This document shows positions 11,692 through 25,550 of a stretch of DNA of 64,000 bases, in pieces (position 1 is the stretch's first letter; every line of letters starts with the position of its first letter). The stretch lies in IMG/VR virus record IMGVR_UViG_3300025869_002060, positions 1 through 64,000 of that record. One strand, 5' to 3'. Position numbers and translations under genes: made by a program. The notes beneath the pieces are model-generated. The model was not told the DNA's origin, did no database searches, and was given only the letters and a program-made list of their open reading frames with translations.

Positions 11692-12141
11692 TTATTTCTT
11701 TCCGTTTTTTATCTTATCAATTTCTTCAGCATTATCATTGATTAGTTTGCTTTGATTCATATCAATTAAAGACTGCAATTTTTGAGCTCTCTCAAGATCT
11801 GTGTCCAAGTGCAGGTCTTTGTTGATAACTTTCTCTAATTTTAAGAATTGAATTCTTTCATTAGGAACAAAACGCCAGGTATATCCTCGATCAGAATATA
11901 CACCAAATACTGTTTCAGAAATTCCAATTTTGACTATAATAGCATCTTTGTCGTCAAGTAGAACTTTATCGCCTTCGTTAAAAGCACGATTTAATTTAAA
12001 TTTTAATCCTTTGGCCAGGCTTGTTGCAAAATCTTTAAACATCATTGTAGCAACTAATGCAATTAATGCAACTGCAAAAGGTTCAATTATATGTGCAATT
12101 TCAAAGCCAACGGCATTTGCAGATAGTATAGTAGGATCCAT
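11692..12141 (-). CDS. small MscS-like mechanosensitive channel protein
   Basis: TM helix, then FKDFATSLAKG...AFNEGDKVLLDDKDAIIVKIGISETVF, resembling the MscS TM3/beta domain. Confidence 0.55.
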   Translation of the reverse strand: MDPTILSANAVGFEIAHIIEPFAVALIALVATMMFKDFATSLAKGLKFKLNRAFNEGDKVLLDDKDAIIVKIGISETVFGVYSDRGYTWRFVPNERIQFLKLEKVINKDLHLDTDLERAQKLQSLIDMNQSKLINDNAEEIDKIKNGKK

Positions 12142-12213
12142 AATCTTTCATTTCCAAGCTAGGTTCTGTTACACTATTTATCAATAAATATTGCTAATAA
12201 CAGGAGTTAATAA

Positions 12214-12381
12214 ATGTCAGTAAGTTGTCAAAATTGTGGACATGAGTCACATTGTGGCGTTCCACTATGGAAAGAGTTTCGAAGAGCATATGATCACGGT
12301 CCTGAAGGCCAAATTGAAGTATGTAAACAATGTCGTTGTGAGTATTGTAGTCAAATTACCAAAAGAAAAGAGGTTAAATGA
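12214..12381 (+). CDS. small Cys/His-rich (zinc-binding) protein, 55 aa
   Basis: Read manually: CQNCGHESHCG...CKQCRCEYC; AGGAG SD. Confidence 0.6.
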   Translation: MSVSCQNCGHESHCGVPLWKEFRRAYDHGPEGQIEVCKQCRCEYCSQITKRKEVK

Positions 12382-12578
12382 TTGAGTTTTTGCTAGTCTT
12401 TATGATTGGTAACACTGTAGTAAATCAAACACAAACTTTTGCTGATATCGACGATTGCAGGTATTTTGCTAGTCGTCTAACAAATCAGCCAGCAATTCCT
12501 CAACCAAAATCAGAAAACGATCCAATAGCATATAAACGTATAACTGCCTATTGCAAACCCATACCAAAAAGAAAATAA
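12378..12578 (+). CDS. small hypothetical protein
   Basis: 66 aa, GAGG SD, hydrophobic N-terminus, two Cys. Confidence 0.6.
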   Translation: MIEFLLVFMIGNTVVNQTQTFADIDDCRYFASRLTNQPAIPQPKSENDPIAYKRITAYCKPIPKRK

Positions 12579-12653
12579 CGGTTATGTTACTCTAATAACA
12601 GTAAGTAACTGACTAACCATTTATATAGATCAACACACCAAAGGAGATCCTAC

Positions 12654-13268
12654 ATGTTAGCAAACCTATTAGACGGAGTCAACAGAGCTTTGGTTACTAA
12701 GTTGGTAATTTTACATACCTTAGTAATTGCTGTCTCAAACTACCTAGTAACAATTAGATTTGATTTATTTCCCGGGGCAGAATTGCCACTATTTGGATCA
12801 TTTCCACTCGCGGCCGCGGCGTTCACATTTCCGATCGTTGTTGTTGCAACTGATTTGACTGTACGGTTAATTGGTAAACAAGCAGGAAGAGCCGTTGTGG
12901 CTATGGCCATTATTCCAGCTATTGTGGCGTCGGTGCTAGTGCTATTAGCACTTGGTGACGAACACGCCTACAGAGTTGGACTTGCAAGTGGCACAGCCTA
13001 TGCAATTGGAACAATGCTTGATGTATATGTATTCCAACACATTCGTGAAAAGTATACCGAAATGTGGTGGGCGGCACCAGCAATTTCTACAGTTGTTGCC
13101 AATATCATCGACACCTATGCATTCTTCTATACAGCGTTCTATCCGGCACCTTGGGTACACGGCGTAGCGTTCAATAATACACTTACTAAAATTGTAGTAG
13201 GTCTTATTGTATTCTTACCAGCATACGGTATGTTATTATCGTATCTTAGGAATAGAGTTAAGTCTTAA
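12654..13268 (+). CDS. yhhQ: queuosine precursor transporter (YhhQ/Vut family)
   Basis: SNYLV, AFTFP...ATDL, G...D..VF, STVVANIIDT..F motifs; multi-TM; AAGGAG SD. Confidence 0.8.
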   Translation: MLANLLDGVNRALVTKLVILHTLVIAVSNYLVTIRFDLFPGAELPLFGSFPLAAAAFTFPIVVVATDLTVRLIGKQAGRAVVAMAIIPAIVASVLVLLALGDEHAYRVGLASGTAYAIGTMLDVYVFQHIREKYTEMWWAAPAISTVVANIIDTYAFFYTAFYPAPWVHGVAFNNTLTKIVVGLIVFLPAYGMLLSYLRNRVKS

Positions 13269-13339
13269 CCACAAGGACGAAACCACTAAACCTCACCTAA
13301 TATAAAAATATATTAGGCCCAATAAAACGGTTATTGGAC

Positions 13340-13369
13340 AAAAAAGCAGAAGGAGACTTCTGCTTTTTT
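13340..13369. terminator. bidirectional intrinsic terminator
   Basis: AAAAAAGCAGAAG-GAGA-CTTCTGCTTTTTT. Confidence 0.75.
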
Positions 13370-13423
13370 CTTGACTTTAAAAAATATCAATGTTATTGTA
13401 AATATAACATTAGAAGGAATAAT

Positions 13424-13735
13424 ATGACAGAAGAATATAAAAAACTAGATGAGAAGATCAAAGAGTTGAACAGTACACGAGTCTATAAAAAAATTACTCC
13501 CAAAGGAGATTTGAGCTGGTATATTAAATGGTCATCTTCGGTTGTGATCCTATTGGCTGTAATGTGTCGCAGTGTTCCGGACGTTCCAAAAATATTTGAT
13601 CTAGTATTGTCATTTCATGGCTGTGCCGGTTGGCTAGTTGTTGGAATGCTTTGGCATGATAGAGCATTGATTTGTTTAAACGGTGTTTTGCTTTTTGTAC
13701 TTGGAAGTGGAATATTAACCTATATAGCCAGGTAA
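13424..13735 (+). CDS. small membrane protein
   Basis: Start at ATG 13424; three hydrophobic segments, WYIKW and WHDRAL motifs. Confidence 0.65.
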   Translation: MTEEYKKLDEKIKELNSTRVYKKITPKGDLSWYIKWSSSVVILLAVMCRSVPDVPKIFDLVLSFHGCAGWLVVGMLWHDRALICLNGVLLFVLGSGILTYIAR

Positions 13736-13742
13736 TTACAAA

Positions 13743-14189
13743 ATGAAAGATAAATTTAAAAAACTTTATATTGACTGGGCAAGACGAGTTGCAGAACTTA
13801 GTCATGCCAAACGACTTCAAGTTGGCGCAGTGATTGTAAAAGATGATACTGTTATCAGTTACGGTTATAACGGTATGCCTAGTGGATGGAATAACGAATG
13901 CGAAGATTTAGTTTTCTTTAAAGATAAAAAACAGCTTACCCAGCCTCTATTAAAAACTAAACCAGAAGTGCTACATGCCGAATCAAATGCAATAGCAAAA
14001 TTAGCTAAATCAAATAATAGTGGGTTAGATGCTGATATCTTTATTACACACAGTCCTTGTGGTGAATGTGCTAAACTAATACTACAAGCCGGTATACGTA
14101 CTGTTTATTATGCTGAGAATTATCGTGATGATACAGGAATAAAATTTCTAAAGAAATCTAAAATCTCGGTTCAGCTACTCGATAAATAA
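13743..14189 (+). CDS. dCMP/deoxycytidylate deaminase
   Basis: HAE...PCxxC zinc motif, GYNG, VGAVIV. Confidence 0.9.
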   Translation: MKDKFKKLYIDWARRVAELSHAKRLQVGAVIVKDDTVISYGYNGMPSGWNNECEDLVFFKDKKQLTQPLLKTKPEVLHAESNAIAKLAKSNNSGLDADIFITHSPCGECAKLILQAGIRTVYYAENYRDDTGIKFLKKSKISVQLLDK

Positions 14190-14234
14190 CATTGAATACA
14201 CCCACCCCAAAATAAATTATAGAAGGATAAATGC

Positions 14235-15083
14235 ATGGGCGTTAAAACTCTAACCTTCCATAATAAGTTGTTAACACTGGTTTATAGTTGTCAAGTTATA
14301 GGCATTGCCGGACTGATATACTACTGGGATCCTATCTACTTGTTATGGACCGCACTTGGTAAACTACTTTTTTATAGCTTTGGCGTAGAAATTGGTTTAC
14401 ACCGTTATCTATCACATCGTAGTTTTTCCATGGCCAAATGGAAAGAAAGAATACTCTTGGTATTGAGTATGTTTGCTTGTTATGGAAGTACACTTGGATG
14501 GTGTGCTAATCATAGAGTTCATCATACCAATGCTGATAAAACAAAAGGTGATCCACACCCTAGTAAGCAATGGTTTAAAACATGGTTTTGGATTAATACA
14601 GAAAAGAATGTTACAATAAGTCCAACAGTAATTAAAGATCTACTCAAAGATCCATTCCATAAATGGATGAGAGAAAATTACTTTAGAGTAGTAGTTGGTA
14701 CAATAGTTCTAAGTGCATTGATATTTGGTCCAAAGTTTGCTATATACTTCTTTGTAGTTCCAGCGGCACTTGCCCAACTTAGCGGCGGATTAATAAATGT
14801 AATTTGTCATAAATGGGGATATCGCTCATATGAAACTACCGATCTAAGCAAGAATAATTTTCTAGTTAATGCATATGCATTGTTTGTGGGTGTTGGATTA
14901 CATAACAACCATCATAAATTTCCTTGGGAACATAAAACACTAACAAAAGGAAAACGCATTTGGCATGAAGTGGATTGGGGCGGATGGTTTATTGAAAAAT
15001 TCTTGTTAGAAAGTAATGGCACAGATTGGGGGAAACGCTCTGGGCCATCAACAAAACAAACAAGTAAAATGTTAATGGAGTAA
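14235..15083 (+). CDS. membrane fatty-acid desaturase (delta-9-like) #1
   Basis: Three His boxes: HRYLSH, HRVHH, HNNHH; TM segments. Confidence 0.9.
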   Translation: MGVKTLTFHNKLLTLVYSCQVIGIAGLIYYWDPIYLLWTALGKLLFYSFGVEIGLHRYLSHRSFSMAKWKERILLVLSMFACYGSTLGWCANHRVHHTNADKTKGDPHPSKQWFKTWFWINTEKNVTISPTVIKDLLKDPFHKWMRENYFRVVVGTIVLSALIFGPKFAIYFFVVPAALAQLSGGLINVICHKWGYRSYETTDLSKNNFLVNAYALFVGVGLHNNHHKFPWEHKTLTKGKRIWHEVDWGGWFIEKFLLESNGTDWGKRSGPSTKQTSKMLME

Positions 15084-15085
15084 GA

Positions 15086-15916
15086 ATGGAACAGATAAGC
15101 AGTAAGTGGTTAGCCAGCTATCTTGGAGGGATTACTGGTGTATTTGGTAGTTTTGTAGTTTTTTGTGCAGACTATCATCATTGGGATTGGTATTTAATAA
15201 GTTTTTTGTGGTGGGTTATTGCATGTAGATTGATTATGCAAACAGTTGGACTACACAAATATTGGGCACACAATAGTTTTGACACTGGACCAATCCGTGA
15301 ATGGATTTTAACATGGGGTTGTATACTATGTGGTACTGGTAGTCCATATAACTGGGCAGTGCATCACAGACATCACCATAAACACACTGACACAGACAAA
15401 GATATTCATAGTCCTAATACTAATACTTTTACACAGTCGTTTTTTATAACATGGATGTTTAAACCAGACAAATGGTGGAGAGATAAGAAAATTTCACTAA
15501 AGCATAAAGATTTGCTGTCTAACAAAAAGGTCATGCATATACACAAGTATTATCATCATTATTGGTTTGCATTGATAATTGCAACATTGATAATTGATTG
15601 GCGTATAACACTATTCTTTGTACTTCAACCAGTTGGTTTGAATATGCTGATGTCTGGAATAAACAACCATTTAAGTCATACAGATATAGTTCCAAAATCA
15701 TACAGGAATTATGAATCAAAAGATAATAGTCATAATTTACCAGGCTGGACCAATTTACTGTTATTAGGCGAAGGATATCATCATAATCATCATCACGCAC
15801 CATGGAAGTACGACAACGCAGACAAGCCAGGAGAGTGGGATTTAAGCGGCTGGGTTATTCGTACGTTCTTTGATATACACCGCGGTAAACTAGGAAGCGA
15901 TTACAAGAGGTATTAG
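15086..15916 (+). CDS. membrane fatty-acid desaturase #2
   Basis: HKYWAH, HHRHHH, GEGYHHNHH. Confidence 0.9.
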   Translation: MEQISSKWLASYLGGITGVFGSFVVFCADYHHWDWYLISFLWWVIACRLIMQTVGLHKYWAHNSFDTGPIREWILTWGCILCGTGSPYNWAVHHRHHHKHTDTDKDIHSPNTNTFTQSFFITWMFKPDKWWRDKKISLKHKDLLSNKKVMHIHKYYHHYWFALIIATLIIDWRITLFFVLQPVGLNMLMSGINNHLSHTDIVPKSYRNYESKDNSHNLPGWTNLLLLGEGYHHNHHHAPWKYDNADKPGEWDLSGWVIRTFFDIHRGKLGSDYKRY

Positions 15917-15917
15917 A

Positions 15918-16730
15918 ATGCAATGGAAGTTAACATATTTTACGGGCTACATTGGTGCAATACTAGGTTTAGTATACACTGTCCAGGCTGACATTTGGCC
16001 TTTGTATGTAGCTAGTATAATATATTGGCTTCTCTTTTGTAGACTTATTTGTCAACTAATAGGATTACATAAGTATTGGACACACAGAAGTTTTTCAACA
16101 GGTCCAATACGCCATTTTATACTAGCATTTGGAAGTATACTATGTGGCACTGGTAGTCCGTACACATGGGCAGTGCATCACAGACATCATCATAAACATG
16201 CTGATACAGAAAAAGATGTACACAGTCCAACACAGAATGGTTGGTTAAGCACAATACTAGGTTACTGGGTATTGAATCCAACAGAATGGTGGTATGACAA
16301 AGGAATACAAGTAACACATAGAGACCTAGTTAAAGACAAACAGGTAATGCATGTTCACAAACATTACTGGAAATACTGGTATGCCTTATTAGTTATTACA
16401 ACATTAATAGATTGGCGTATTGCTTTGCTATTTGTAATTCAACCAATTGGGCTAAGTTTATTTGTACATGGGTGCAATAATTTGTTTAGTCACACAACCA
16501 AGTTTCCAAAATCATATAGGAATTATGATTTACCTGACAACAGTAGAAATTTACCAATCTGGACAAACCTAATGTTACTAGGAGAAGGGTATCACAACAA
16601 TCACCATAACAAACCTTGGGCATATGATAATGCAGACAAGCCAGGAGAATGGGATTTCAGTGCATTGGTAATTAAGTATGTATTTGATATTCATCGCGGT
16701 AAACGTGGCTATGAATATAATAAAATTTAA
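15918..16730 (+). CDS. membrane fatty-acid desaturase #3
   Basis: HKYWTH, HHRHHH, GEGYHNNHH; close paralog of #2. Confidence 0.9.
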   Translation: MQWKLTYFTGYIGAILGLVYTVQADIWPLYVASIIYWLLFCRLICQLIGLHKYWTHRSFSTGPIRHFILAFGSILCGTGSPYTWAVHHRHHHKHADTEKDVHSPTQNGWLSTILGYWVLNPTEWWYDKGIQVTHRDLVKDKQVMHVHKHYWKYWYALLVITTLIDWRIALLFVIQPIGLSLFVHGCNNLFSHTTKFPKSYRNYDLPDNSRNLPIWTNLMLLGEGYHNNHHNKPWAYDNADKPGEWDFSALVIKYVFDIHRGKRGYEYNKI

Positions 16731-16742
16731 TAGGAGAATAAT

Positions 16743-17513
16743 ATGAATCCATATAATCAGACACTTTGGGTAGTATGGGGTAACCATCTACTAACAATTG
16801 GAGCAATACTATTCTTTTTTGAATGGTGGATGATTCCAGTTGCCTTTCTATCAGGGCATTTGTTTAGTGTGTTCAGTGAAATAGGAATTCACAGATATTT
16901 TACACACAAAGCATTTACAGTTGAGTCCAGATGGAAAGAGCAGTTAATGAAAGTGTTTGCTTTTTTAACAGGACAAGGAGCAATACTAAGTTGGGTGACA
17001 GTGCATAGGCATCATCATGTTTACGAAGACCAAGAAGGTGATCCTCATAGTCCTAAGATATTTCCATATTGGAAGATCTATTTAGGCTTGTTTCCAAAAA
17101 CCTACAAATCAAATTTGGTAATGGATTTAATCAGGCACAAAGATAGAAGATATTTTGTATTTGAAAACAAATACTATTGGTTGATGTGGACTGCTCTATG
17201 GTTAGGAAGTTTTGCAATTAGTCCATATCTATTCTTTGTAATTGTTAGTGGCAGTGCAATGTGGTATGCTTTTACTAGTGTAGTTAATATATTTTTACAT
17301 GATGAAGTAGTTGGCCATAAACCACACCAAGAACATGTAGCCACCAATAGTGGATGGTTGAACTGGTTAACTGGTGTTGGTTATCACAACAATCATCACA
17401 AGAATCCTAGAAGCTATACATACAACCTAGATGGAAAAGATCGAGACTGGATTGGTGCTATTATTAAATACGTTATAGCAGACAAAGTAGAAGTTGAACA
17501 ACAGAAAGCGTGA
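16743..17513 (+). CDS. membrane fatty-acid desaturase #4
   Basis: HRYFTH, HRHHH, GYHNNHH; AGGAGA SD. Confidence 0.9.
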   Translation: MNPYNQTLWVVWGNHLLTIGAILFFFEWWMIPVAFLSGHLFSVFSEIGIHRYFTHKAFTVESRWKEQLMKVFAFLTGQGAILSWVTVHRHHHVYEDQEGDPHSPKIFPYWKIYLGLFPKTYKSNLVMDLIRHKDRRYFVFENKYYWLMWTALWLGSFAISPYLFFVIVSGSAMWYAFTSVVNIFLHDEVVGHKPHQEHVATNSGWLNWLTGVGYHNNHHKNPRSYTYNLDGKDRDWIGAIIKYVIADKVEVEQQKA

Positions 17514-17520
17514 GTACAAT

Positions 17521-18375
17521 ATGAAAATAGATCCAGACAAGTTTAAGCCAAGTTGGACCGGGCATAAAATTAAAGCATTGATTGTTATGGCACACCTAGC
17601 ATTCATTGGCTATTGTTTTTCAGCAGAATTTAATTGGTTGTTTGTACTCATTGGTGGACCTTTGTTATGGTTCTTTATTTCTAAGATGGGCATGGAAGTT
17701 GGTTTTCATAGATTGTTTTGCCATAAATCATTTTCAACTACACAATGGAAAGCAAGAATGCTACTGATACTTGGTACAATTTCAAGTGTAGGTAGCAGTC
17801 TAACTTGGGTAGCTACACACCGAGTACATCATAAACATGCAGATCATTTAGGTGATCCACAAAACAGTCGTAGAGATAACTCATGGTGGAAAAATTGGTT
17901 AACACTTTGGGACGACAATTGGAAATCCGAGCCGCTTATTATTAAAGATTTAATGCGTGATAAATGGCATCGTTATATACACAAACACTATTTTAAATTG
18001 GTACTTGGTTATATCTCCACACTGGGCGTTATAAGCCTGGCAGTATCTAGTTGGTATCCTATTGTTGTATTGTGGGCTTTTCCTGTTATACTAAATTTCA
18101 ATCTAGCAGGATTTTTAAATTCTCTATTTCATAACAACATAAATGGTTGGGGATTTTATAGAAATTATACTTCTGATGATGATAGCAGAAACCATGCAGT
18201 ACTAAATCTTCTTATGGCAGGTGCTGGAATGCACAACAATCATCATGGGGCTCCTGCTAGTTATACCTATAATACCAATAACAAATGGTATGAAATAGAC
18301 CCAACTGCAAAGTTTGTTAAGAAATTTTTAGCCACTGAAATTACACTACCAGACGGATCTAAAGAAAAAGTATAA
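17521..18375 (+). CDS. membrane fatty-acid desaturase #5
   Basis: HRLFCH, HRVHH, GMHNNHH; start at ATG 17521. Confidence 0.9.
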   Translation: MKIDPDKFKPSWTGHKIKALIVMAHLAFIGYCFSAEFNWLFVLIGGPLLWFFISKMGMEVGFHRLFCHKSFSTTQWKARMLLILGTISSVGSSLTWVATHRVHHKHADHLGDPQNSRRDNSWWKNWLTLWDDNWKSEPLIIKDLMRDKWHRYIHKHYFKLVLGYISTLGVISLAVSSWYPIVVLWAFPVILNFNLAGFLNSLFHNNINGWGFYRNYTSDDDSRNHAVLNLLMAGAGMHNNHHGAPASYTYNTNNKWYEIDPTAKFVKKFLATEITLPDGSKEKV

Positions 18376-18422
18376 ACGACTCAATCTATAATTACTAGTA
18401 TTAATCAACTTAGGAAATTTCA

Positions 18423-19121: not shown

Positions 19122-19569
19122 GTTAGTTAATTACTATAGCTGGTTTGTTCTAGCAATGGTATTACTAATTGTTACCAATGTATTAGGTCGTTACTTCTTT
19201 GATCTTAGATTTGATTTTGCAGTCGACGTGAGTTGGCAGTTGTATGGAATAATGATTATAATGGGTTGTAGTCATGCATTATCAACAGACTCGCATATAA
19301 GAACTGACGTATACTGGAACAAATTCAGTGATAAAGTTAAAGCTCGTATTGATTTTGTAAGTTATCTAATTTTATTTTTTCCTGCTATCAGTATACTCAC
19401 ATACAAAAGTATTTTTGATACTATAAGAAGTGTAGCACAAAACGAAACAAGCAGTGCAACAATGGCTCAACTCATAGTATGGCCATTGAAGATAGGAATT
19501 ACATTAGGATTAATATTATTACTGTATCAAGGTGCAGTAAACACAAGAAAGTGTTTTAAAAGATGTTAG
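19114..19569 (+). CDS. dctQ: TRAP transporter small permease
   Basis: Four TM helices; VLGRYFF, HIRTD motifs. Confidence 0.85.
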   Translation: MTKLVNYYSWFVLAMVLLIVTNVLGRYFFDLRFDFAVDVSWQLYGIMIIMGCSHALSTDSHIRTDVYWNKFSDKVKARIDFVSYLILFFPAISILTYKSIFDTIRSVAQNETSSATMAQLIVWPLKIGITLGLILLLYQGAVNTRKCFKRC

Positions 19570-20942
19570 CCATTGTAATGTTAGTGGCAATGATTGCCGG
19601 CATATTTGTAGGTGTTCCAGTAGCATTTACTCTCTTATTTTTAGCACTAGGTTTTGGCTACATCACAATGGGAGAAAATGTATTTGATTTAGCCTATTAT
19701 AATTTAATAGGTGGGCTTAGTGACGAAGTGTTCATGGCAATACCAATGTTTATATTCATGGGTTATGTTGCTGAACGGGCAGGTTTGGTAGAAGGATTGT
19801 TTGACAGTCTTAAACGTATGCTAAGTGGAATCAAAGGAAGTTTGTACTATGTTGTTATTGTAATTGCTATTCTTATCAGTCTGGCTACAGGTGTAGTTGG
19901 TGCCAGTGTGACCTTACTGGGTATTATGGCCGCGCCGCACATGATGCGGTTGGGTTACGATCACAAATTAAGTGCTGGTGTAATTGCCGCCGGAGGATCA
20001 ATGATTATTATTCCTCCAAGTGTTCCTTTAATTGTTATGGCACCAACAATGAATGTTAGTATTGTTGATCTATATGCGGCTGTAATGGGTCCAGGATTGA
20101 TGATTGCTTTTATGTTTATGGTTTATTGTGCCTATCAAGTTAGACGATATCCTGAACTAGCACCAGCAACAGAACATGAACCTGTTCCGTGGACCTTGTA
20201 TACTAGATTAATACTTGATGTTTTTCCATTGGCTTTCTTAATAGCAGTTACATTAGGCAGTATGTTATTTGGACTAGCAACCAGTACAGAAGCAGGATCA
20301 TTTGGAGCCGCAGGTGCTCTAATACTTGCTCTTGCCAATAGAAGTTTAACCTGGGAAAGATTGCAAGAGGCTATGTTAAAAACAACAAGCACAAGTGCCG
20401 TTGTTATGTTACTTGCTATAGCCTCAACTATTTTTGGTGCAGTTTTTACAGGATTGGGCGGGGACAATATTATTGTTGATGCTCTTAATAGTTTACCAAT
20501 ACCAACTTGGGCACTGGTAGGCACAATACTTGTATTGTGTCATATACTAGGCTGGCCGTTTGAATGGCCTGTAGTGGTACTGGTTTTTTTACCGATGTTT
20601 ATGCCCATCCTGGTAAATAACAACGTCGACATGTTGTGGTTTGGAGCCGCACTAGGGATAGTGATACAAACGGCCTACCTAACTCCTCCTGTTGCACTTA
20701 CATCATATTATTTAAAACAAGTTGTTCCTTCCTGGGATTTAACTATGATATTTAAATCTATGATGCCTTTTATGTGGATTCAAGTTTTAGCAGTCTGCAT
20801 ATTATTCCTAACCCCTAGTATCGCCACCTGGTTTCCAAAATATTTGGACCATCAGAGGCAGGTACTAAATAATTCTGTTACAGGAGAGAAACCTGTAGGA
20901 GAAATAGATTTCTTATCAAAGAGCAAGTCAAAATCAAATTAA
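19563..20942 (+). CDS. dctM: TRAP transporter large permease
   Basis: AIPMFIFMG, IIPPS(V)PLIV, YLTPPV motifs; about 12 TM. Confidence 0.92.
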   Translation: MLAIVMLVAMIAGIFVGVPVAFTLLFLALGFGYITMGENVFDLAYYNLIGGLSDEVFMAIPMFIFMGYVAERAGLVEGLFDSLKRMLSGIKGSLYYVVIVIAILISLATGVVGASVTLLGIMAAPHMMRLGYDHKLSAGVIAAGGSMIIIPPSVPLIVMAPTMNVSIVDLYAAVMGPGLMIAFMFMVYCAYQVRRYPELAPATEHEPVPWTLYTRLILDVFPLAFLIAVTLGSMLFGLATSTEAGSFGAAGALILALANRSLTWERLQEAMLKTTSTSAVVMLLAIASTIFGAVFTGLGGDNIIVDALNSLPIPTWALVGTILVLCHILGWPFEWPVVVLVFLPMFMPILVNNNVDMLWFGAALGIVIQTAYLTPPVALTSYYLKQVVPSWDLTMIFKSMMPFMWIQVLAVCILFLTPSIATWFPKYLDHQRQVLNNSVTGEKPVGEIDFLSKSKSKSN

Positions 20943-20956
20943 AGGAGATATTTTGG

Positions 20957-22048
20957 ATGAAAAAGACTTTAGTAGGAAGTATTGTAGCTGGTGCATTAGC
21001 TTTGTTTTCAACAGGCGTACTAGCAGATGATACAAAAACTTTAAAAATTGCAAGTTCCTACCCAGCAGTAAGCACACTTACTGATCAAGCAACTTTTATT
21101 GCAGATCGTGTTAAGACACTTACTGAAGGAAAGGTAATTATGGAATTTAAACCAGCTGGCGCATTAGTTCCAGCATTCCAAGTACTTGATGCAACAGCAT
21201 CTGGTGCGGCTGACGGAGCATGGACTCAGTCATATTACTGGGTTGGTAAAGATAAAACTTTATCGTTATTCAACTCACCCTTAGGTGGACCATACGGTAT
21301 GGACGGTATGGATTTCTTAGGCTGGATGTTCCACGGTGGCGGACTTGATCTATACAGAACTTTCTACAAGGATGTTTTAAAATTAGATGTTGTTCCTTTT
21401 CCAGTTATGCCAGCACAGAATCAGCCATTAGGTTGGTTTCATCGCCCAATTAAAGATCTAGCAGATCTAAAAAACTTTAAATGTCGTCAAACAGGTATTA
21501 ACGTAGAACTGTATGCTCGTATGGGTATGCAGACTATTGGTATGCCAGGTGGTGAGATTGCCGCCGCAGGGCGTAAAGGTGTTATTAATTGTGCAGAATT
21601 TGTTGGTGGTTTAGAAGATCAACGCATGGGCTTCAGCAAAATTTGGAAGTATTACTATCTAAACAGTTTGCATGAGCATTCAAACACAGGCGATTTACTA
21701 CTCAATGGTAAAGTATGGCGTAGCCTTTCAAAGCAACAGCAGACAGCAATTCGTTCTGCCGCTTATGAATCATATCTATGGTGGATGACTGACATGCAAG
21801 GTAAAAACGGTCAAGCACTAGCAGAAATGATTGAACAAGATGGAGTTAAAGTTATGAAAACTCCAGCAGATATCATTGAAGCAGAGTTAAAGACTATTGA
21901 TGCTATGTTAGCTGAAGAGAGTGCAAAGAACCCTTGGTTTGCTAAAGTACTTGCTTCACAAAAAGCATGGGCAAAGAAAGTTGTACCATTTAAGAACGTT
22001 GCGTTTACACCTTATAACTATGCCGCAGATTACTACTGGGGCAATTAA
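20957..22048 (+). CDS. dctP: TRAP substrate-binding protein (DctP/TakP-like)
   Basis: Signal peptide; PAGALVPAFQVLDA, YYWVGK, QPLGWF motifs; AAGGAG SD. Confidence 0.9.
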   Translation: MKKTLVGSIVAGALALFSTGVLADDTKTLKIASSYPAVSTLTDQATFIADRVKTLTEGKVIMEFKPAGALVPAFQVLDATASGAADGAWTQSYYWVGKDKTLSLFNSPLGGPYGMDGMDFLGWMFHGGGLDLYRTFYKDVLKLDVVPFPVMPAQNQPLGWFHRPIKDLADLKNFKCRQTGINVELYARMGMQTIGMPGGEIAAAGRKGVINCAEFVGGLEDQRMGFSKIWKYYYLNSLHEHSNTGDLLLNGKVWRSLSKQQQTAIRSAAYESYLWWMTDMQGKNGQALAEMIEQDGVKVMKTPADIIEAELKTIDAMLAEESAKNPWFAKVLASQKAWAKKVVPFKNVAFTPYNYAADYYWGN

Positions 22049-22073
22049 GTTTTAAACAAAACTAAGTTATTAG

Positions 22074-22099
22074 AAAAGGGCCGTTGGCCCTTTTCTTTT
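22074..22099 (+). terminator. intrinsic terminator
   Basis: AAAAGGGCC-GTT-GGCCCTTTTCTTTT. Confidence 0.75.
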
Positions 22100-22261
22100 G
22101 ACTGAATTTTCTCACGTATAAATAGTGTTAGCAACGCCCATTAGTGGACGTCGGATACCTTGGACGCTTTGGTAATCATAAACCATTTATCTAGTTGACT
22201 AGTAACGCCCTTCCGTGTATAGTGTGAGAGTACTATTAGCATTAACTTTTAGGTATCACGC

Positions 22262-23443
22262 ATGTTCACATCTCTTCAGCACCCTGACCGATATGGTTAT
22301 TATCAAATTGGTAATCGACGTACTTACAGTAAACTAGAGTTCGTTGATTATCTTAATCAATATCCTGCAGACTGGCATTGGGATTACAACGATGCATTCT
22401 TTAGCAGTTTTGATTGGGCAACAGAACCCGCAGAAGATATCAACACACTATATCGTAAGCGAGCAGAAGCACTACGAGAACAATACGATTACGTTGTTCT
22501 CTTCTATTCGGGTGGATACGACAGTTCGAATATGCTATATGCATTTTTGGATAACGGAATTCCTATAGATGAAATCTGTACGTACTATGCAAGTCAGGAT
22601 ACATTCACAGGACAAAAAATAGAACTTGATAATTTTACCTGGCAGAAACTAGATGCCATTGAAAAGAAATATCCCAATATAAAGATCACACGTTGGGATT
22701 ACGGAGATGAATTTTTTAATTGGTCTGACAAAATTAAACAAGCAGGCGCCGGCGCTAACATGGTAGAAATGATAGCAGGAGGACTGATTTCTATTAACCG
22801 TATTGTATTAGATTTTGGTCATGAATATGTTCCACACTGGAAGAAGTTGCTCATGCAAGGCAAAAAGGTTGCATGGGTACACGGTGCAGATAAACCTATG
22901 TTGCGATATCACAACGATACGTGGAAATTTAACTTTCATGATGGAATAATCAATGGTCGATTAACTCCAGTACGGCAAATACTTGATCAAGGTGATATTG
23001 GAAATATTGAATTATTCTATTGGGCTCCCGATGCGACTTGTGCAAATATTATTATCAAACAATGTCATTTACTTAAAAATTATTACACCCCACAAGCAAA
23101 GATAGACTTTTCTAAAATACCAGGTGTTAAAAAGCATAATATTGAATATGGTTGGGAAATAGATAATATCTCACTTGACTTTGTTAAACAACTATATCCA
23201 AGACTATTCTCTGGTAACTTGATTTTACCAAATGAAAATTGGTCAACGATTAAAAGTGCCCGCAGTATGTTTGGCAACAGAGATCATTGGTTCACACAAT
23301 TAAACCATCATGCAGTAGATGAGTTTCATCGAATGTGGAAAGGAGCAAATAGCTCAATACATTCTCATTGGCATGATTGGTTCCACAACGGCACTATCGA
23401 AAGCGGTATTCGTAGTTGCATTACACAAGATTATATTATATGA
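22262..23443 (+). CDS. PP-loop (N-type ATP pyrophosphatase superfamily) protein
   Basis: VLFYSGGYDS motif (SGGxDS). Confidence 0.6.
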   Translation: MFTSLQHPDRYGYYQIGNRRTYSKLEFVDYLNQYPADWHWDYNDAFFSSFDWATEPAEDINTLYRKRAEALREQYDYVVLFYSGGYDSSNMLYAFLDNGIPIDEICTYYASQDTFTGQKIELDNFTWQKLDAIEKKYPNIKITRWDYGDEFFNWSDKIKQAGAGANMVEMIAGGLISINRIVLDFGHEYVPHWKKLLMQGKKVAWVHGADKPMLRYHNDTWKFNFHDGIINGRLTPVRQILDQGDIGNIELFYWAPDATCANIIIKQCHLLKNYYTPQAKIDFSKIPGVKKHNIEYGWEIDNISLDFVKQLYPRLFSGNLILPNENWSTIKSARSMFGNRDHWFTQLNHHAVDEFHRMWKGANSSIHSHWHDWFHNGTIESGIRSCITQDYII

Positions 23444-24708
23444 TTGAAGTTGTAATTGCATTAGCGGCCGGAATATGTGCAGGTGTGTTTGCTGGGTTAA
23501 TACCCGGTGTTCCAATTATGATGGGCTTTATGCTTTTCTTGCCAATGGTCAGTGCTGATGCATTTTGTTTAAGTTTGTATGGAGTGGTAATGACTCTTGG
23601 TACACAGTTCTTTGGTAGCCAAGCAGTATTGTATTATCGTATTCCTGGGGAAACCAGCAGTTTCCCCACATTAATTGAAAGCAAAAACTTTACAACACCT
23701 GAACAACTACGTCATACTATACAAGTGACAACCTGGGGCAGTCTTGTTGCAACTATAATTGCATTGTTGCTATTATCGTTGGCTCTTACAAGTGGTGCAT
23801 TAGATTGGGTCAAGCTCAGCATTGAATTTAGAGGTCTTGTGTTTGCATTGCTTATTGGTATGTGTATATTTGGTAATGGTCATGCATTGGCAAATATTGT
23901 TATTCTTGGTCTAGCAAGTTTCTTTGCATTCTACGAAGACATTGCTCCGCTAACAGGATTTATGCCTACCTACTACTTTAGCAGTATGTTGTCTCTTATT
24001 ATTATCTTCGCAATGCAGTTGGTATGGAATAGTTCTGACAGGTTTAAAACATACTCAGTTGGAACACATTCAACGTTTAAACTACGCGAGTGGTTGCCTT
24101 TTTATGCAAAATATGGATCTCTTGGAACCGTGTTTGGACTGGTACCACAACTAGGTGCTACCTTTAGCAGTTATCTTACTTACTCGTGGTTAAAGAAGAA
24201 TAATGCCAGTCCGACACACAGAGTTGCCGGAGCAGAAACAGCGAATAACGGAGCAATAGTATTTCAATGGTTTCCGTTGTTTTTGTTTGGTATTCCAATT
24301 ACAGGCAGTGAGATAATGCTAGTATCTCATTTTAATCAATTAGGACTTGATTTTAGTTTTCTTAAAGACTGGACTCAAGTTGCATGGCTTGCAGGATTGA
24401 TCGCACTAGCAGGATTAATCTACACTAGAATTTGCTTAACGACGAATCAATTACTTTATAAAGTGGTTGGAAGAGCATTGAGCTCACGTTACCTCACAAT
24501 CGCTATTGCGTTTGGAAGCATGTACTTATTTTATTGGGTTGGTAATTACACTGCTAAGTTTATGTTAATCCATTTAATGATTTTCATTCCGGTCAGTTGG
24601 ATAGTAGCTAAATTAAAAGTAAACCTATTAGCAGTTACTATTGGAATGATATTGATGAGTGAGATACTTCTTACTTTTTATCAACTGTTACAAATTCACA
24701 TTCTATAA
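23440..24708 (+). CDS. tripartite tricarboxylate transporter TctA-like permease
   Basis: G..AGLIPG, IPGETSS, VAGAETANNGA, GIP motifs; multi-TM. Confidence 0.75.
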   Translation: MIEVVIALAAGICAGVFAGLIPGVPIMMGFMLFLPMVSADAFCLSLYGVVMTLGTQFFGSQAVLYYRIPGETSSFPTLIESKNFTTPEQLRHTIQVTTWGSLVATIIALLLLSLALTSGALDWVKLSIEFRGLVFALLIGMCIFGNGHALANIVILGLASFFAFYEDIAPLTGFMPTYYFSSMLSLIIIFAMQLVWNSSDRFKTYSVGTHSTFKLREWLPFYAKYGSLGTVFGLVPQLGATFSSYLTYSWLKKNNASPTHRVAGAETANNGAIVFQWFPLFLFGIPITGSEIMLVSHFNQLGLDFSFLKDWTQVAWLAGLIALAGLIYTRICLTTNQLLYKVVGRALSSRYLTIAIAFGSMYLFYWVGNYTAKFMLIHLMIFIPVSWIVAKLKVNLLAVTIGMILMSEILLTFYQLLQIHIL

Positions 24709-24719
24709 GGAGAATTAAA

Positions 24720-25550
24720 GTGAAAAAATTACTAATTGCCGCAACGATGTTGTGTTTGCCGTTTACAGCAAATGCCGCAGATATTATTCCTACTGCAAAC
24801 CTCAAAGGTCCACAAGGAAAAATAGTACAGAATATTATTGCTAATTCTGTAACAACAAAGTTTGTAGCAAAGCAAACAGGTGGATGTGGAGAAGCCGTAG
24901 CAACATTTGAATCTGCTACAGGTCCTGTTGCTATTATATGGAGTAACTCCATGTACAGGAATAGCAAGAAGGCAAACCAAAATTGTATTATCAAACACGA
25001 TGAAGCCAGATCTGTTATGCAGGCTCGTGTACCATACGACATTTGTGTTACAAAAGGAGTCAACCTAGTTAAAGGCACTGACATGGCTTTTGGCAATAAC
25101 AAGTTTAATCCACAAATTGACCAACTTGAAGATCTTAACACAAACGGATTGGGTATTGAGTTTAGAACTGTTACATATAGAGGCAGTGGCCCAGTAGCCG
25201 CCGCAGTTGGCAATGGAGATGTTAATATTGGAATTATTGCAACTCCAAGTGCAAAGAAAGCAATTGAAGCAGGAAGTATTCAATGCTTGTATTCAACAGG
25301 ATCAGACCGTTACGGTCAACTGCCAATGTCAGAGTTTGTTCCTGGTACAAAACTTGCTAACTACAATCTTGGTATGATGGTGTTTACTCGTAACATGAGC
25401 AAAGCAGATCACGCCGCATTGGTTTCAGAACTTGAGCCACTCGAAGAAGCTCTAGTAATGCAAGACATGTTTGATGTCAAAGTTGATCTCGAAGATGCAG
25501 ATACTAAAGCATTTATTGAAGAAGCAAAGAGCTTAGAAAACACTAACTAA
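24720..25550 (+). CDS. TctC/Bug-like periplasmic substrate-binding protein (divergent)
   Basis: Signal peptide; VTYRGSGPVAAAVGNGDV resembles the Bug/TctC 'PYKGGGPA..DL.GG.V' segment; adjacent to TctA. Confidence 0.6.
   Translation: MKKLLIAATMLCLPFTANAADIIPTANLKGPQGKIVQNIIANSVTTKFVAKQTGGCGEAVATFESATGPVAIIWSNSMYRNSKKANQNCIIKHDEARSVMQARVPYDICVTKGVNLVKGTDMAFGNNKFNPQIDQLEDLNTNGLGIEFRTVTYRGSGPVAAAVGNGDVNIGIIATPSAKKAIEAGSIQCLYSTGSDRYGQLPMSEFVPGTKLANYNLGMMVFTRNMSKADHAALVSELEPLEEALVMQDMFDVKVDLEDADTKAFIEEAKSLENTN

What the first reader, a model, noticed from the sequence alone, without database searches (positions are those of the whole stretch)
11692..25550. About 14-kb envelope and nutrient reprogramming island next to nutrient-sensing RNAs
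Seen together: MscS-like channel, YhhQ, five desaturases, TRAP and TTT transporters, next to the Gln riboswitch and Trp attenuator locus. Inference: a coordinated programme in which the phage monitors host N and amino-acid status, then remodels the inner membrane and adds importers to extend productive infection in nutrient-poor water.
Basis: inference. Interest (0 to 1): 0.62.

Follow-up and report, generated by a model that had tools for sequence, protein, structure and literature searches.

The report
Mosaic membrane-gene cargo in jumbo phage
A marine jumbo phage carries a 14-kb block packed with membrane genes (five lipid desaturases, two kinds of nutrient importer, a mini mechanosensitive channel), but the block is a patchwork of separately acquired modules, and nothing links it to the nearby glutamine riboswitch.

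Summary
The gene inventory is real. Window 11692-25550 encodes a minimal MscS-like protein, YhhQ, a dCMP deaminase, five intact SCD/Delta9-type desaturases, a complete TRAP DctQMP set, and a TctA plus TctC-like binding protein. Ten of the 21 multi-pass membrane proteins on the 228-kb phage contig sit in this block (p 7e-9).

It is not one conserved island. The nearest relatives share YhhQ, the deaminase, three desaturases and PP-loop-TctA-SBP in synteny, but lack TRAP, Des2/Des3 and DUF6552. Twenty-seven further loci of more distant relatives carry none of the island genes at this position. The TRAP cassette belongs to a virus-only clade that is also found in T4-like phages and in another jumbo phage, at other genome positions.

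The tandem glutamine riboswitch lies on the opposite strand and precedes its own 32-aa ORF. No Trp attenuator passed Rfam thresholds.

New leads: PP-loop-TctA-SBP is a conserved three-gene viral module, and desaturase arrays of up to 11 copies recur in viral contigs. Best reading: a mosaic cargo slot of auxiliary genes acting at the host inner membrane.

The parts
11692..12141 (-). Minimal MscS-like protein, 149 aa: one long TM/pore helix, a five-strand beta domain and a C-terminal helix. It is the only minus-strand gene in the block.
   Evidence: No Pfam hit. It belongs to a family of 223 small proteins. The family profile hits only MscS chains (9SDG E 7.5e-6). AF2 pLDDT 92.6. The top 50 Foldseek matches are all MscS family, prob 1.0, rmsd 3.2-4.4 A over 79-94 aligned columns in the better-superposed hits. 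72% identical ortholog in L016.
12654..13268 (+). YhhQ/COG1738 transporter for the queuosine precursors preQ0/preQ1.
   Evidence: Pfam Vut_1 E 2.1e-20. TIGR00697 94.8 bits, above its 50.95 cutoff. 68% ortholog in L016. A terminator-like hairpin at 13340-13369 follows it.
13334..13735 (+). DUF6552 small membrane protein. Its true start is probably later than the listed TTG. It has no ortholog in the relatives.
   Evidence: Pfam DUF6552 E 1.2e-15. 2-3 TM-like segments. No match in L016-L018.
13743..14189 (+). dCMP/cytidine deaminase.
   Evidence: Pfam dCMP_cyt_deam_1 E 5.7e-22. 66-68% orthologs in L016 and L018.
14235..15083 (+). Desaturase 1 (SCD/Delta9 type). Has orthologs in the relatives.
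   Evidence: FA_desaturase E 2.2e-13. His boxes intact. 66% in L016 and 59% in L018. Forms a clade with L016/L018/L019 copies.
15086..16730 (+). Desaturases 2 and 3 (15086-15916 and 15918-16730), a tandem duplicate pair that is absent from the nearest relatives.
   Evidence: 56% identical to each other. Sister taxa at 100% support, inside a clade (99) shared with other viral contigs. No orthologs in L016/L018.
16743..17513 (+). Desaturase 4.
   Evidence: FA_desaturase E 4.2e-17. 64-67% orthologs in L016/L018.
17494..18375 (+). Desaturase 5.
   Evidence: FA_desaturase E 5.8e-18. 52% ortholog in L016. Named stearoyl-CoA/fatty-acid desaturase homologs reach only 30-36% identity, and no hit beyond the 50-78% orthologs exceeds 38%. 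31.6% to the desaturase of Pelagibacter phage Mosig.
18423..19121 (+). 232-aa soluble protein of unknown function. A GNAT-like fold is only a lead.
   Evidence: No Pfam or NCBIfam hit. 29-36% orthologs sit next to the desaturases in L016/L018. ESM Atlas structure neighbours are GNAT acetyltransferases at TM 0.45-0.53, from a low-confidence model.
19066..22048 (+). Complete TRAP cassette: DctQ (19066-19569), DctM (19563-20942) and DctP (20957-22048, with an N-terminal signal-peptide-like segment). It is an insertion specific to this phage within its lineage.
   Evidence: Pfam DctQ 5.7e-18, DctM 1e-62 (profile 1-412 of 413), DctP 1.7e-30. The best solved relatives of DctP are the keto-acid binders 7UG8 (E 7e-43) and TakP 2HZK. 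Arg177 is invariant. 68-80% homologs in 15 IMG/VR contigs, with T4-like context where examined, and in the 217-kb contig L175. Absent from L016-L018. Bacterial homologs reach 55% at most. Viral and bacterial sequences split on one branch.
22262..23443 (+). 393-aa PP-loop ATP pyrophosphatase, resembling the synthetase domain of asparagine synthetase B. It is the first gene of a conserved PP-loop-TctA-SBP module.
   Evidence: Invariant SGGxDS motif. No Pfam or PDB sequence hit. AF2 pLDDT 91. Foldseek matches are PP-loop enzymes. VIA-align best matches are AsnB 1CT9 (Z 10.6, 292 residues aligned) and beta-lactam synthetase (Z 9.4). Full-length structural matches occur only among uncharacterised phage proteins. 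Adjacent to TctA in 22 of 39 viral TctA loci.
23416..24708 (+). TctA-family large membrane subunit, 430 aa, about 9-12 TM helices.
   Evidence: Pfam TctA E 2.6e-26, profile 2-420 of 423. 43-44% orthologs in L016/L018. A paralog lies at G000 100453-101760. Homologs in 39 IMG/VR loci.
24720..25550 (+). TctC/Bug-like periplasmic binding protein with an N-terminal signal-peptide-like segment. Family membership is borderline.
   Evidence: Pfam TctC 25.4 bits, below the 27 cutoff. PDB 5OEI E 7e-4. Profile match to Bug27 E 2.7e-4. Atlas neighbours are all viral, and 14 of 30 clusters carry PF03401. Always sits downstream of TctA.

Best explanation
The block is a variable cargo slot of a marine jumbo myophage. 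It lies between the tRNA cluster and a conserved replication module and has filled up with auxiliary genes whose products act at the host inner membrane or periplasm. It consists of at least five modules with different histories.

1. A minimal MscS-like channel protein.
2. YhhQ plus a dCMP deaminase, for nucleobase and nucleotide supply. YhhQ probably serves the phage's own FolE/QueD/QueE-like 7-deazaguanine genes, which lie 150 kb away.
3. An array of old SCD-type desaturase paralogs with a small partner protein.
4. A mobile, virus-resident TRAP DctQMP cassette whose binding protein is of the TakP/keto-acid type.
5. A three-gene PP-loop(AsnB-like)-TctA-SBP module.

Inferred mechanism: during a long infection in nutrient-poor seawater, the signal-peptide-bearing binding proteins are exported to the periplasm of a Gram-negative host. 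The ion-gradient-driven TRAP and TTT-like permeases then add uptake capacity for organic (keto/carboxylic) acids without using ATP. In the TTT module the imported carboxylate is adenylated and amidated by the PP-loop enzyme. The desaturases use O2 and host reductant to add double bonds to acyl chains.

Shown here: gene identity and integrity, the mosaic distribution, the viral clades and the conserved neighbourhoods. Inferred: substrates, timing, and benefit to the phage. The modules are selected separately. They share a place of action, not a common switch.
For: - Identity and integrity of the genes.
- Phage origin.
- Enrichment of membrane proteins, p 6.6e-9.
- Partial synteny with the nearest relatives L016/L017/L018 (YhhQ, deaminase, Des1/4/5, the 232-aa gene, TctA, SBP, PP-loop), without TRAP, Des2/3 or DUF6552.
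- Only 2 of the 29 loci of related phages with at least 8 kb upstream of the 62-83% conserved core gene carry any island gene, and both come from the L016/L017 contigs.
- A 357-kb relative carries glycosyltransferases, sugar-modifying enzymes and GroEL at this position instead.
- The TRAP cassette occurs at 68-80% identity in T4-like phages (gp32, gp59, gp15, neck protein) and in a distantly related 217-kb phage contig, at other genome positions.
- Viral DctP sequences form one group, separated from the best 40 bacterial representatives by a long branch, with no bacterial homolog above 55% identity.
- Desaturase paralog classes are shared across viral lineages, and related phages carry desaturases elsewhere in their genomes.
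- PP-loop-TctA-SBP adjacency on the same strand recurs in divergent viral contigs.
- FolE, QueD-like and QueE-like genes are present in the same genome. Phage-encoded YhhQ is on record in PMC6884629.
- The region is recovered in marine metagenomes from 13 studies and in two metatranscriptome libraries, with 0-1 mismatches in the listed contigs.
Against: - No expression timing or transport assay exists. The RNA-library contigs could come from carried-over DNA, and no silent control stretch could be laid.
- No TctB was found, and the TctC-like protein is below the Pfam cutoff.
- No DpdA/TGT or QueC family match was found in the 65% of the genome that is available, so the YhhQ link to deazaguanine is incomplete.
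- The host is unknown.
- The nearest relatives do keep much of the block in order, so some functional coupling between modules cannot be excluded.
- The promoter and terminator scans were at chance level and do not define transcription units.
Confidence: 0.6

Rival explanations
1. One reading: a single coordinated programme in which the phage senses host nitrogen and amino-acid status through the glutamine riboswitch and a Trp attenuator, then switches on membrane remodelling and importers.
For: The tandem glutamine aptamers are real and score strongly (62 and 59 bits) and lie about 2.4 kb from the block. The block is membrane-rich and mostly co-oriented with short gaps between genes.
Against: The aptamers are on the minus strand and read away from the block. 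They are followed directly by a Shine-Dalgarno sequence and a 32-aa ORF at 9167-9069, so they control that ORF in cis. Three tRNA genes and a 345-aa ORF lie in between. No Trp leader reached its Rfam threshold; the only matches are Thr_leader at 37.8 bits against a gathering score of 55 and trpB at 30 bits against 59. The modules are not co-conserved.
Confidence: 0.06
2. The desaturase array makes a specialised unsaturated acyl product (an unusual lipid, N-acyl compound or signal) rather than tuning bulk membrane fluidity. It would work with the possibly GNAT-like 232-aa protein, the phage ACP and perhaps the PP-loop amidoligase, with the transporters supplying precursors.
For: - The five copies fall into four old paralog classes 25-37% identical to one another. 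Three of the classes have orthologs in the nearest relatives.
- Of 79 viral loci found with the desaturase profile, 45 carry two or more copies, up to 11.
- In L029 the array is interleaved with a FabF-like ketoacyl synthase, an ACP, a PP-loop enzyme, an ATP-grasp ligase and rubrerythrin.
- G000 encodes an ACP.
- The 232-aa neighbour has GNAT-like structure neighbours.
Against: No ketoacyl synthase was found in G000. Its ACP is 190 kb away among tail-fibre-like genes. The GNAT lead rests on a low-confidence model. The characterised phage desaturases are plain Delta9 acyl-lipid desaturases (PMC5776448).
Confidence: 0.2
3. The genes are passengers: host-derived morons that accumulate in a permissive slot and are decaying or neutral, with no role in infection.
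For: The slot is hypervariable among relatives. A DNA variant in one run diverges immediately to the right of DctP (22081-22318).
Against: - All catalytic His boxes, the PP-loop motif and the full-length permease domains are intact.
- Orthologs persist at 43-72% identity in relatives.
- The viral DctP, TctC-like, PP-loop and mini-MscS families consist mostly of viral or uncharacterised metagenomic sequences, which indicates long retention under selection in viruses.
- Cellular homologs reach only about 30-55% identity, so these are not recent captures.
Confidence: 0.1
4. The block is cellular DNA (a host genomic island or contaminant) that was mis-joined to a phage contig.
For: TRAP, TTT, YhhQ and desaturases are typical cellular genes. 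Matches to DctM in the deposited phage collection are only weak, from fragments or bacterial records.
Against: - The same junctions occur in independent contigs: L180 and L262 at 100% identity, and the syntenic L016-L018.
- DNA contigs in runs X6 and X7 cover nearly the whole laid stretch (16500-22400) at near-identity.
- GC content and coding strand match the flanks.
- No bacterial genome among 185,579 species representatives has a DctP more than 54% identical.
Confidence: 0.02

Closest known systems
Cyanophage-encoded Delta9 lipid desaturases (vFAD; Roitman et al. 2018, PMC5776448)
   Same: A phage-borne, membrane-bound desaturase of the DesC/SCD type with three His boxes, proposed to alter host membrane lipids during infection.
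   Different: That paper describes a vFAD gene in cyanomyophages and contains no mention of 'tandem' or 'copies'. Here there are five copies in four old paralog classes, in a jumbo phage of unknown host that is probably a Gram-negative marine bacterium. Named cellular homologs reach only 30-36% identity. Regiospecificity is untested.
TRAP transporters of the TakP/keto-acid-binding type (PDB 2HZK/2HZL, 7UG8; COG4663)
   Same: DctQ, DctM and DctP are adjacent in Q-M-P order. The permease domains are full length. The binding protein has a signal-peptide-like N-terminus and the conserved arginine.
   Different: The cassette is encoded by phages and belongs to a virus-only clade that is 68-81% identical internally and at most 55% identical to any bacterial homolog. 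The substrate has not been determined.
Tripartite tricarboxylate transporters (TctABC/Bug family)
   Same: A TctA-family permease is followed by a secreted binding protein with weak TctC/Bug similarity.
   Different: No TctB was found. The binding protein is below the Pfam threshold. The pair is coupled to an AsnB-like PP-loop enzyme in many viral contigs, an association I do not know from cellular TTT operons (own knowledge).
MscS mechanosensitive channels, including minimal forms (171-aa MscS 9SDG; Trypanosoma cruzi MscS 9BGQ)
   Same: A pore-lining TM3-like helix followed by the beta domain.
   Different: There is only one TM helix and no TM1-TM2 sensor paddle. A single C-terminal helix stands in place of the alpha-beta vestibule domain. 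The whole family consists of small proteins, mostly 100-185 aa among the listed members. Oligomeric state and channel activity are unknown.
Hypervariable auxiliary-gene islands of marine T4-like phages (pelagimyophages, PMC7029224)
   Same: A variable region near the replication genes that holds envelope-related, substrate-transport and radical-SAM genes. Some TRAP-bearing contigs are pelagimyophage-like: the L013 gp15 is 62-64% identical to those of HTVC008M and Melnitz.
   Different: This is a different phage lineage, a jumbo phage distantly related to PA5oct and Atu_ph07, with a far larger membrane-gene load. The paper does not name TRAP or TTT genes.
Phage YhhQ with 7-deazaguanine pathways (Hutinet et al. 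2019, PMC6884629)
   Same: A phage-encoded YhhQ homolog occurs together with FolE, QueD-like and QueE-like genes in the same genome.
   Different: No DpdA/TGT or QueC family match was found in the recovered 65% of the genome. YhhQ lies about 150 kb from the pathway genes.

Membership tests
TRAP transporter (DctPQM) | Small 4-TM DctQ and large DctM membrane subunits encoded together | tested here: met
   Pfam DctQ E 5.7e-18 (profile 1-130 of 132). DctM E 1e-62 (profile 1-412 of 413), 11 TM-like segments. The genes overlap by a few bases.
TRAP transporter (DctPQM) | DctP-type periplasmic binding protein with an export signal and the carboxylate-binding arginine | tested here: met
   Pfam DctP E 1.7e-30. 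NCBIfam TRAP_S1 55.5 bits against a cutoff of 50. Hydrophobic N-terminus at residues 4-24. R177 is invariant in 13 homologs and aligns with the Arg of the KMRIPG stretch in 7UG8. The role of that arginine is taken from my own knowledge of the family.
TRAP transporter (DctPQM) | Solute uptake driven by an ion gradient | not testable with these tools
   Requires a transport assay.
Tripartite tricarboxylate transporter (TctABC) | TctA large permease | tested here: met
   Pfam TctA E 2.6e-26, profile 2-420 of 423. The second copy scores E 4e-35.
Tripartite tricarboxylate transporter (TctABC) | TctC/Bug-type binding protein | tested here: inconclusive
   Pfam 25.4 bits, below the 27 cutoff. 5OEI E 7e-4. 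Bug27 E 2.7e-4 with a 6-sequence profile. Viral Atlas neighbours partly carry PF03401. The structure was not modelled.
Tripartite tricarboxylate transporter (TctABC) | TctB small membrane subunit | tested here: not met
   No small multi-TM ORF lies next to either TctA gene, and no TctB family hit appeared in the Pfam scans of the block. I therefore file it as TTT-like, not as a canonical TctABC system.
SCD/DesC-type Delta9 membrane desaturase | Three His boxes (HxxxxH, HxxHH, HxxHH) on a 4-TM scaffold | tested here: met
   H56/H61, H93/H96/H97 and H223/H226/H227 are invariant in all five copies. 2-4 TM-like segments each. Profile against SCD1 4ZYO/4YMK gives E 1e-24.
SCD/DesC-type Delta9 membrane desaturase | Delta9 regiospecificity on acyl-lipid or acyl-CoA substrates | not testable with these tools
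   Requires expression and fatty-acid analysis. The NCBIfam DesA equivalog scores are far below its cutoff (47-65 bits against 400).
MscS channel | Pore helix TM3 followed by the beta domain | tested here: met
   Profile hits are exclusively MscS chains over TM3 plus the beta domain. Foldseek prob 1.0, rmsd 3.2-4.4 A over 79-94 aligned columns in the better-superposed hits.
MscS channel | TM1-TM2 tension-sensing paddle and C-terminal alpha-beta vestibule domain | tested here: not met
   The model has one helix (3-50), a beta domain (59-104) and one helix (115-145). Family members are mostly 100-185 aa. I therefore call it MscS-like, not a canonical MscS.
YhhQ/COG1738 queuosine-precursor transporter | Match to the curated equivalog model above its cutoff | tested here: met
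   TIGR00697 94.8 bits against 50.95. PRK11212 136.6 bits, below its 252 cutoff.
PP-loop ATP pyrophosphatase (AsnB-type synthetase domain) | SGGxDS PP-loop motif on a Rossmann-like fold | tested here: met
   S83-G84-G85-x-D87-S88 is invariant in 32 homologs. Foldseek finds PP-loop enzymes. VIA-align gives AsnB Z 10.6 and beta-lactam synthetase Z 9.4.
PP-loop ATP pyrophosphatase (AsnB-type synthetase domain) | N-terminal glutaminase domain, or membership in QueC | tested here: not met
   No Pfam match for the protein at E 0.01 or better. No QueC (PF06508) match anywhere in the genome. The structural match covers only the synthetase part of AsnB (chain residues 95-516). QueC scores only Z 5.3.
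Riboswitch-controlled operon | Aptamer upstream of, and on the same strand as, the genes it controls | tested here: not met
   The aptamers are at 9300-9194 on the minus strand. The block genes are on the plus strand from 12654 onwards. The aptamers are followed by their own ORF.

The most novel reading that the evidence does not exclude
Marine phages keep a membrane toolkit of their own that has evolved inside viruses for a long time and moves between unrelated lineages (jumbo and T4-like). It would comprise:

1. Complete TRAP importers that form a virus-only clade.
2. A three-gene module of an AsnB-like PP-loop amidoligase, a TctA permease and a binding protein, which imports a carboxylate and traps or converts it by amidation.
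3. Multi-paralog SCD-type desaturase arrays, sometimes with a ketoacyl synthase and an ACP, that make unsaturated lipids the host cannot make.
4. A one-helix mini-MscS.

This window would be one of the richest single examples.
Probability: 0.3. Interest if true: 0.75.

Novelty: new variant of a known kind. Interest (0 to 1): 0.55.

Why it matters
Auxiliary metabolic genes are well known in marine phages. Complete, multi-subunit, binding-protein-dependent importers carried by phages are not described in the literature I could search: nine full-text searches returned no paper on phage-encoded TRAP or TTT transporters (among them).

If these transporters work, a phage can change what an infected cell takes up from seawater, and infected cells are a sizeable share of marine bacteria. 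That bears on carbon-flux models.

Three results give concrete, testable entry points to viral control of the host inner membrane: the recurring PP-loop-TctA-SBP neighbourhood, the desaturase arrays of up to 11 copies, and the mini-MscS family.

For this finding itself the practical message is a correction. The block is real and unusual, but it is a patchwork, and it has no cis link to the riboswitch next to it.

Tried and rejected
- **Nucleotide search of the phage collection.** Megablast of the block found nothing. tblastn with DctM found only weak matches of 22-27% in fragments or bacterial records, so no deposited phage carries this cassette.
- **Literature.** Searches for phage TRAP/TTT genes and for desaturase arrays were unproductive. 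Only the vFAD, pelagimyophage and YhhQ papers were useful.
- **Host assignment.** I tried to name a host from the nearest cellular DctP homologs. The best are 46-54% identical and come from soil, freshwater or groundwater Beta- and Alphaproteobacteria MAGs, which is uninformative. The host stays unknown. I infer a Gram-negative host only from the signal-peptide-bearing binding proteins.
- **Recent capture of TRAP from SAR11 or cyanobacteria.** Rejected, because no bacterial homolog exceeds 55% identity.
- **The 393-aa protein as the missing QueC.** Rejected as untestable or unsupported: there is no PF06508 hit, QueC scores only Z 5.3 against 10.6 for AsnB, and hhalign with the QueC-like protein of L029 matched only the PP-loop motif.
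- **Promoter and terminator scans.** These were at chance level and I did not use them to define operons.
- **ACP neighbourhood in G000.** It gave tail-fibre-like genes, not lipid genes.

Full report
**What the window is**

The window is the first 64 kb of a single 228,348-bp contig with 37% GC. It is about 93% coding and most genes are on the plus strand. The contig is an IMG/VR virus record with linear ends, and CheckV estimates it to be 65% complete. It encodes:
- a DnaB-type helicase 48-51% identical to those of the jumbo phages Atu_ph07 and PA5oct;
- a second helicase, a ribonucleotide reductase and tail-spike-like proteins;
- five tRNA genes at 8727-10112.

The same sequence occurs nearly letter for letter in marine metagenomes from 13 studies.

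**Checking the observation**

- **YhhQ.** ORF 12654-13268 is a YhhQ/COG1738 transporter (Vut_1 E 2e-20; TIGR00697 above its cutoff).
- **Desaturases.** Five consecutive ORFs from 14235 to 18375 match FA_desaturase.
- **TRAP.** ORFs 19066-22048 are DctQ, DctM and DctP, with full-length profile coverage.
- **TTT.** ORF 23416-24708 is a TctA. The next ORF, 24720-25550, is a secreted protein with borderline TctC similarity.
- **MscS-like.** This call could not be confirmed with Pfam or by a single-sequence PDB search. An exhaustive search then found a family of 223 small proteins. A profile built from 38 of them hit only MscS-family chains in the PDB, over the pore helix and beta domain (best E 7.5e-6). 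A confident AF2 model (pLDDT 92.6) found only MscS-family structures in its top 50 Foldseek matches. It has one transmembrane helix and no sensor paddle or vestibule domain, so it is MscS-like and not a canonical MscS.

- a DUF6552 membrane protein;
- a dCMP deaminase;
- a 232-aa protein whose only lead is a GNAT-like fold taken from a weak Atlas model;
- a 393-aa protein with no family match.

I studied the 393-aa protein further. It has an invariant SGGxDS PP-loop and folds confidently (pLDDT 91). It resembles the synthetase domain of asparagine synthetase B and beta-lactam synthetase (Z 10.6 and 9.4; PP-loop enzymes by Foldseek). Full-length structural relatives occur only among uncharacterised phage proteins.

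The clustering of membrane proteins is not a chance effect. Ten of the contig's 21 proteins with two or more hydrophobic segments lie among the block's 17 genes (p 6.6e-9).

**The nutrient-sensing RNAs**

Rfam confirms two adjacent glutamine aptamers, but they are on the minus strand at 9300-9194. Read on that strand, they are followed by a Shine-Dalgarno sequence and a 32-codon ORF at 9167-9069, so they control that ORF. They point away from the block. Three tRNA genes and a 345-aa ORF separate them from it.

No Trp leader passes its threshold. There is a tRNA-Trp gene, and a sub-threshold Thr_leader/trpB-like structure at 8847-8997. The sequence shows no cis link between these RNAs and the block.

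**Is the block co-conserved?**

Only in part.

*Nearest relatives.* A profile of the five desaturases retrieved 79 viral loci. Three of these (L016 and L017, which are near-identical, and L018) are close relatives with clear synteny. They carry:
- the 345-aa gene;
- the mini-MscS (72% identity);
- YhhQ (68%);
- the deaminase (66-68%);
- orthologs of Des1, Des4 and Des5 (L018 has only Des1 and Des4);
- the 232-aa gene;
- TctA (43-44%);
- the binding protein (48-50%);
- the PP-loop gene (49%);
- the same downstream genes.

They lack the TRAP cassette, Des2/Des3 and DUF6552. They have the PP-loop gene after, not before, TctA-SBP. They also hold a second TctA-SBP pair inside the block, which in this genome sits at 100.4-102.7 kb.

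*More distant relatives.* I used the conserved 342-aa gene at 29528-30556 as an anchor. It has 62-83% homologs in 80 loci, on contigs of up to 357 kb. Of the 29 loci with at least 8 kb upstream, only the two from the L016/L017 contigs carry any island gene. In a 357-kb relative, that position holds glycosyltransferases, a sugar dehydratase, a C-methyltransferase, a radical-SAM protein, GroEL and a GGACT-family (gamma-glutamyl cyclotransferase-like) protein.

The position is therefore a variable cargo slot, and the present content is specific to a narrow lineage.

**The TRAP cassette**

DctM and DctP have 68-80% identical homologs in 15 IMG/VR contigs, and none of those contigs shares the other block genes. 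In the two contigs I examined, a DctQ precedes DctM, and the context is T4-like: gp32, gp59, neck protein and gp15. One contig is closest to Pelagibacter phage HTVC008M and Methylophilales phage Melnitz, and another is nearest to cyanomyophages. A 217-kb ENA contig that is a distant relative of this phage carries the cassette next to its DnaJ/ClpB genes.

Across 5.8 billion proteins, DctP homologs fall into two sets: a tight set at 64-81% identity, then a gap to 55% or less. The best of 185,579 species-representative genomes reach 46-54%. In a quick tree, 16 viral sequences separate from the 40 best bacterial sequences on one long branch (length 0.88, SH-aLRT 88).

The closest solved relatives are a keto-acid-binding protein (7UG8) and TakP, and Arg177 is invariant. 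The cassette is thus a virus-resident, laterally mobile TRAP system, probably for keto or monocarboxylic acids. The genome holds two further orphan DctP genes outside the window.

**The desaturases**

All five keep the three His boxes, and the nearest solved structure is SCD1. Des2 and Des3 are 56% identical to each other. All other pairs are 25-37% identical.

In a quick tree, Des1, Des4 and Des5 each group with their orthologs in L016 and/or L018 (Des5 with L016 only). Des2 and Des3 are sisters inside a well-supported class shared with several other viral contigs. For Des5, the named cellular desaturase homologs are only 30-36% identical, and nothing beyond its 50-78% orthologs exceeds 38%.

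Of the 79 viral loci, 45 carry two or more copies and some carry 7-11. In L029 the array is interleaved with a FabF-like ketoacyl synthase, an ACP, a PP-loop enzyme, an ATP-grasp ligase and rubrerythrin. Related jumbo-phage contigs carry desaturases at a different genome position.

G000 has an ACP but no ketoacyl synthase in the recovered part. A Delta9 desaturase gene carried by cyanophages is on record and experimentally characterised (PMC5776448). I found no report of arrays like these.

**The TTT-like module**

A profile of the TctA copies found 39 viral loci. In 22 of them a homolog of the PP-loop protein lies within 4 kb, usually directly adjacent and on the same strand. In 23 of them a TctC-like binding protein is present within the locus, and in the loci whose layout I examined it directly follows TctA. 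Several loci also have a DctP-like protein. L266 repeats the exact order seen in the window.

PP-loop-TctA-SBP is therefore a conserved viral module, and it is the strongest functional linkage inside the block. My inference is that an imported carboxylate is adenylated and amidated.

**YhhQ and the deaminase**

The genome also encodes FolE, a phosphoribosyltransferase, a QueD-like PTPS and a QueE-like radical-SAM protein at 169.5-173.7 kb. Phage-encoded YhhQ has been noted in connection with 7-deazaguanine DNA modification (PMC6884629). No TGT/DpdA or QueC family match was found in the available 65% of the genome. These two genes fit nucleobase and nucleotide supply better than envelope remodelling.

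**Expression**

Two marine metatranscriptome libraries hold about 82% of the sampled words of 14235-22048. Their contigs cover Des4, Des5, the 232-aa gene and DctQMP with 0-1 differences in the listed pieces. This is consistent with transcription in nature. DNA carry-over cannot be excluded, and I could not lay a control stretch because only one call was allowed. One DNA run shows a variant that diverges just to the right of DctP (22081-22318), at the edge of the cassette.

**Verdict**

The block is a mosaic cargo slot of auxiliary genes that act at the host inner membrane, assembled from modules with separate histories. It is not a co-conserved programme wired to the neighbouring riboswitch.

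It is a new variant of a known kind, the phage auxiliary-gene island. Three component findings look under-described and are testable:
- virus-clade TRAP cassettes;
- the PP-loop-TctA-SBP module;
- multi-copy desaturase arrays together with a one-helix MscS-like family.

Noticed in passing
window 9069-9300 (-): Tandem glutamine riboswitch aptamers (62 and 59 bits) are followed by a Shine-Dalgarno sequence and a 32-codon ORF at 9167-9069. From memory, the peptide has a basic stretch reminiscent of cyanobacterial glutamine-synthetase inactivating factors. This is a lead only and was not tested.
   Followed up: partly
window 8847-8997 (+): A sub-threshold Thr_leader match (37.8 bits against a gathering score of 55, E 2e-4) and a trpB-motif match lie between tRNA-Thr and tRNA-Trp. 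They overlap a 21-codon ORF at 8871-8936 that contains several Thr and Ile codons.
   Followed up: partly
window 57136-57220 (+): A freshwater-2 RNA motif scores above its gathering threshold (64.8 bits against 49.9) in this marine phage, at the start of ORF 57143-57628.
   Followed up: no
G000 100453-103790 and 182272-183300 (outside the window; loci L176, L177): A second TctA (Pfam E 4e-35) is followed by a 305-aa binding-protein-like gene, and there are two orphan DctP-type binding proteins. In the relatives L016-L018, homologs of the TctA-SBP pair lie inside the island. In other viral contigs, TctA2-SBP2-DctP forms a recurring module.
   Followed up: partly
G000 169574-173744 (locus L261): FolE, a phosphoribosyltransferase, a QueD-like PTPS and a QueE-like radical-SAM gene suggest a 7-deazaguanine pathway. 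No QueC or TGT/DpdA family match was found in the recovered genome. In the relative L062, a desaturase is inserted between the QueD-like and QueE-like genes.
   Followed up: partly
L029 (IMG/VR 3300013006_001903), L040, L024, L028, L027: These viral contigs carry 7-11 SCD-type desaturase paralogs within about 20 kb. In L029 the paralogs are interleaved with a FabF-like ketoacyl synthase, an ACP, a PP-loop enzyme, an ATP-grasp ligase and rubrerythrin.
   Followed up: partly
G000 203022-211181 (-) and 90430-91470: A run of six tandem paralogs of 360-470 aa, plus one distant copy. One of them gives a weak radical-SAM match.
   Followed up: no
G000 150566-155940: Three paralogs of about 394 aa (32-37% identical to each other) are related to the gene directly upstream of DctQ in the 217-kb contig L175. 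Function unknown.
   Followed up: no
G000 214676-214930 (-): An acyl carrier protein gene (PP-binding E 3.7e-14) lies among tail-fibre-like genes (Peptidase_G2 and glycine-rich domain proteins).
   Followed up: partly
window 22081-22318: In DNA run X6, a contig matches the TRAP cassette and then diverges (34 substitutions, 11 indels) before running on into unlike sequence just to the right of DctP. This is a strain-level variable junction.
   Followed up: no
window 13340-13369: A 13-bp-stem hairpin flanked by A and T runs (a bidirectional terminator-like structure) lies just after YhhQ and is followed by a promoter-like site at 13371-13399. It also suggests that the listed TTG start of the DUF6552 ORF is too early.
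   Followed up: no
L195 1-10000 (IMG/VR 3300027759_004177, 357 kb): In this relative, the slot upstream of the conserved 342-aa gene holds GT17 and GT9 glycosyltransferases, a GDP-mannose-dehydratase-like enzyme, a C-methyltransferase, a radical SAM/SPASM protein, GroEL and a GGACT-family (gamma-glutamyl cyclotransferase-like) protein.
   Followed up: partly
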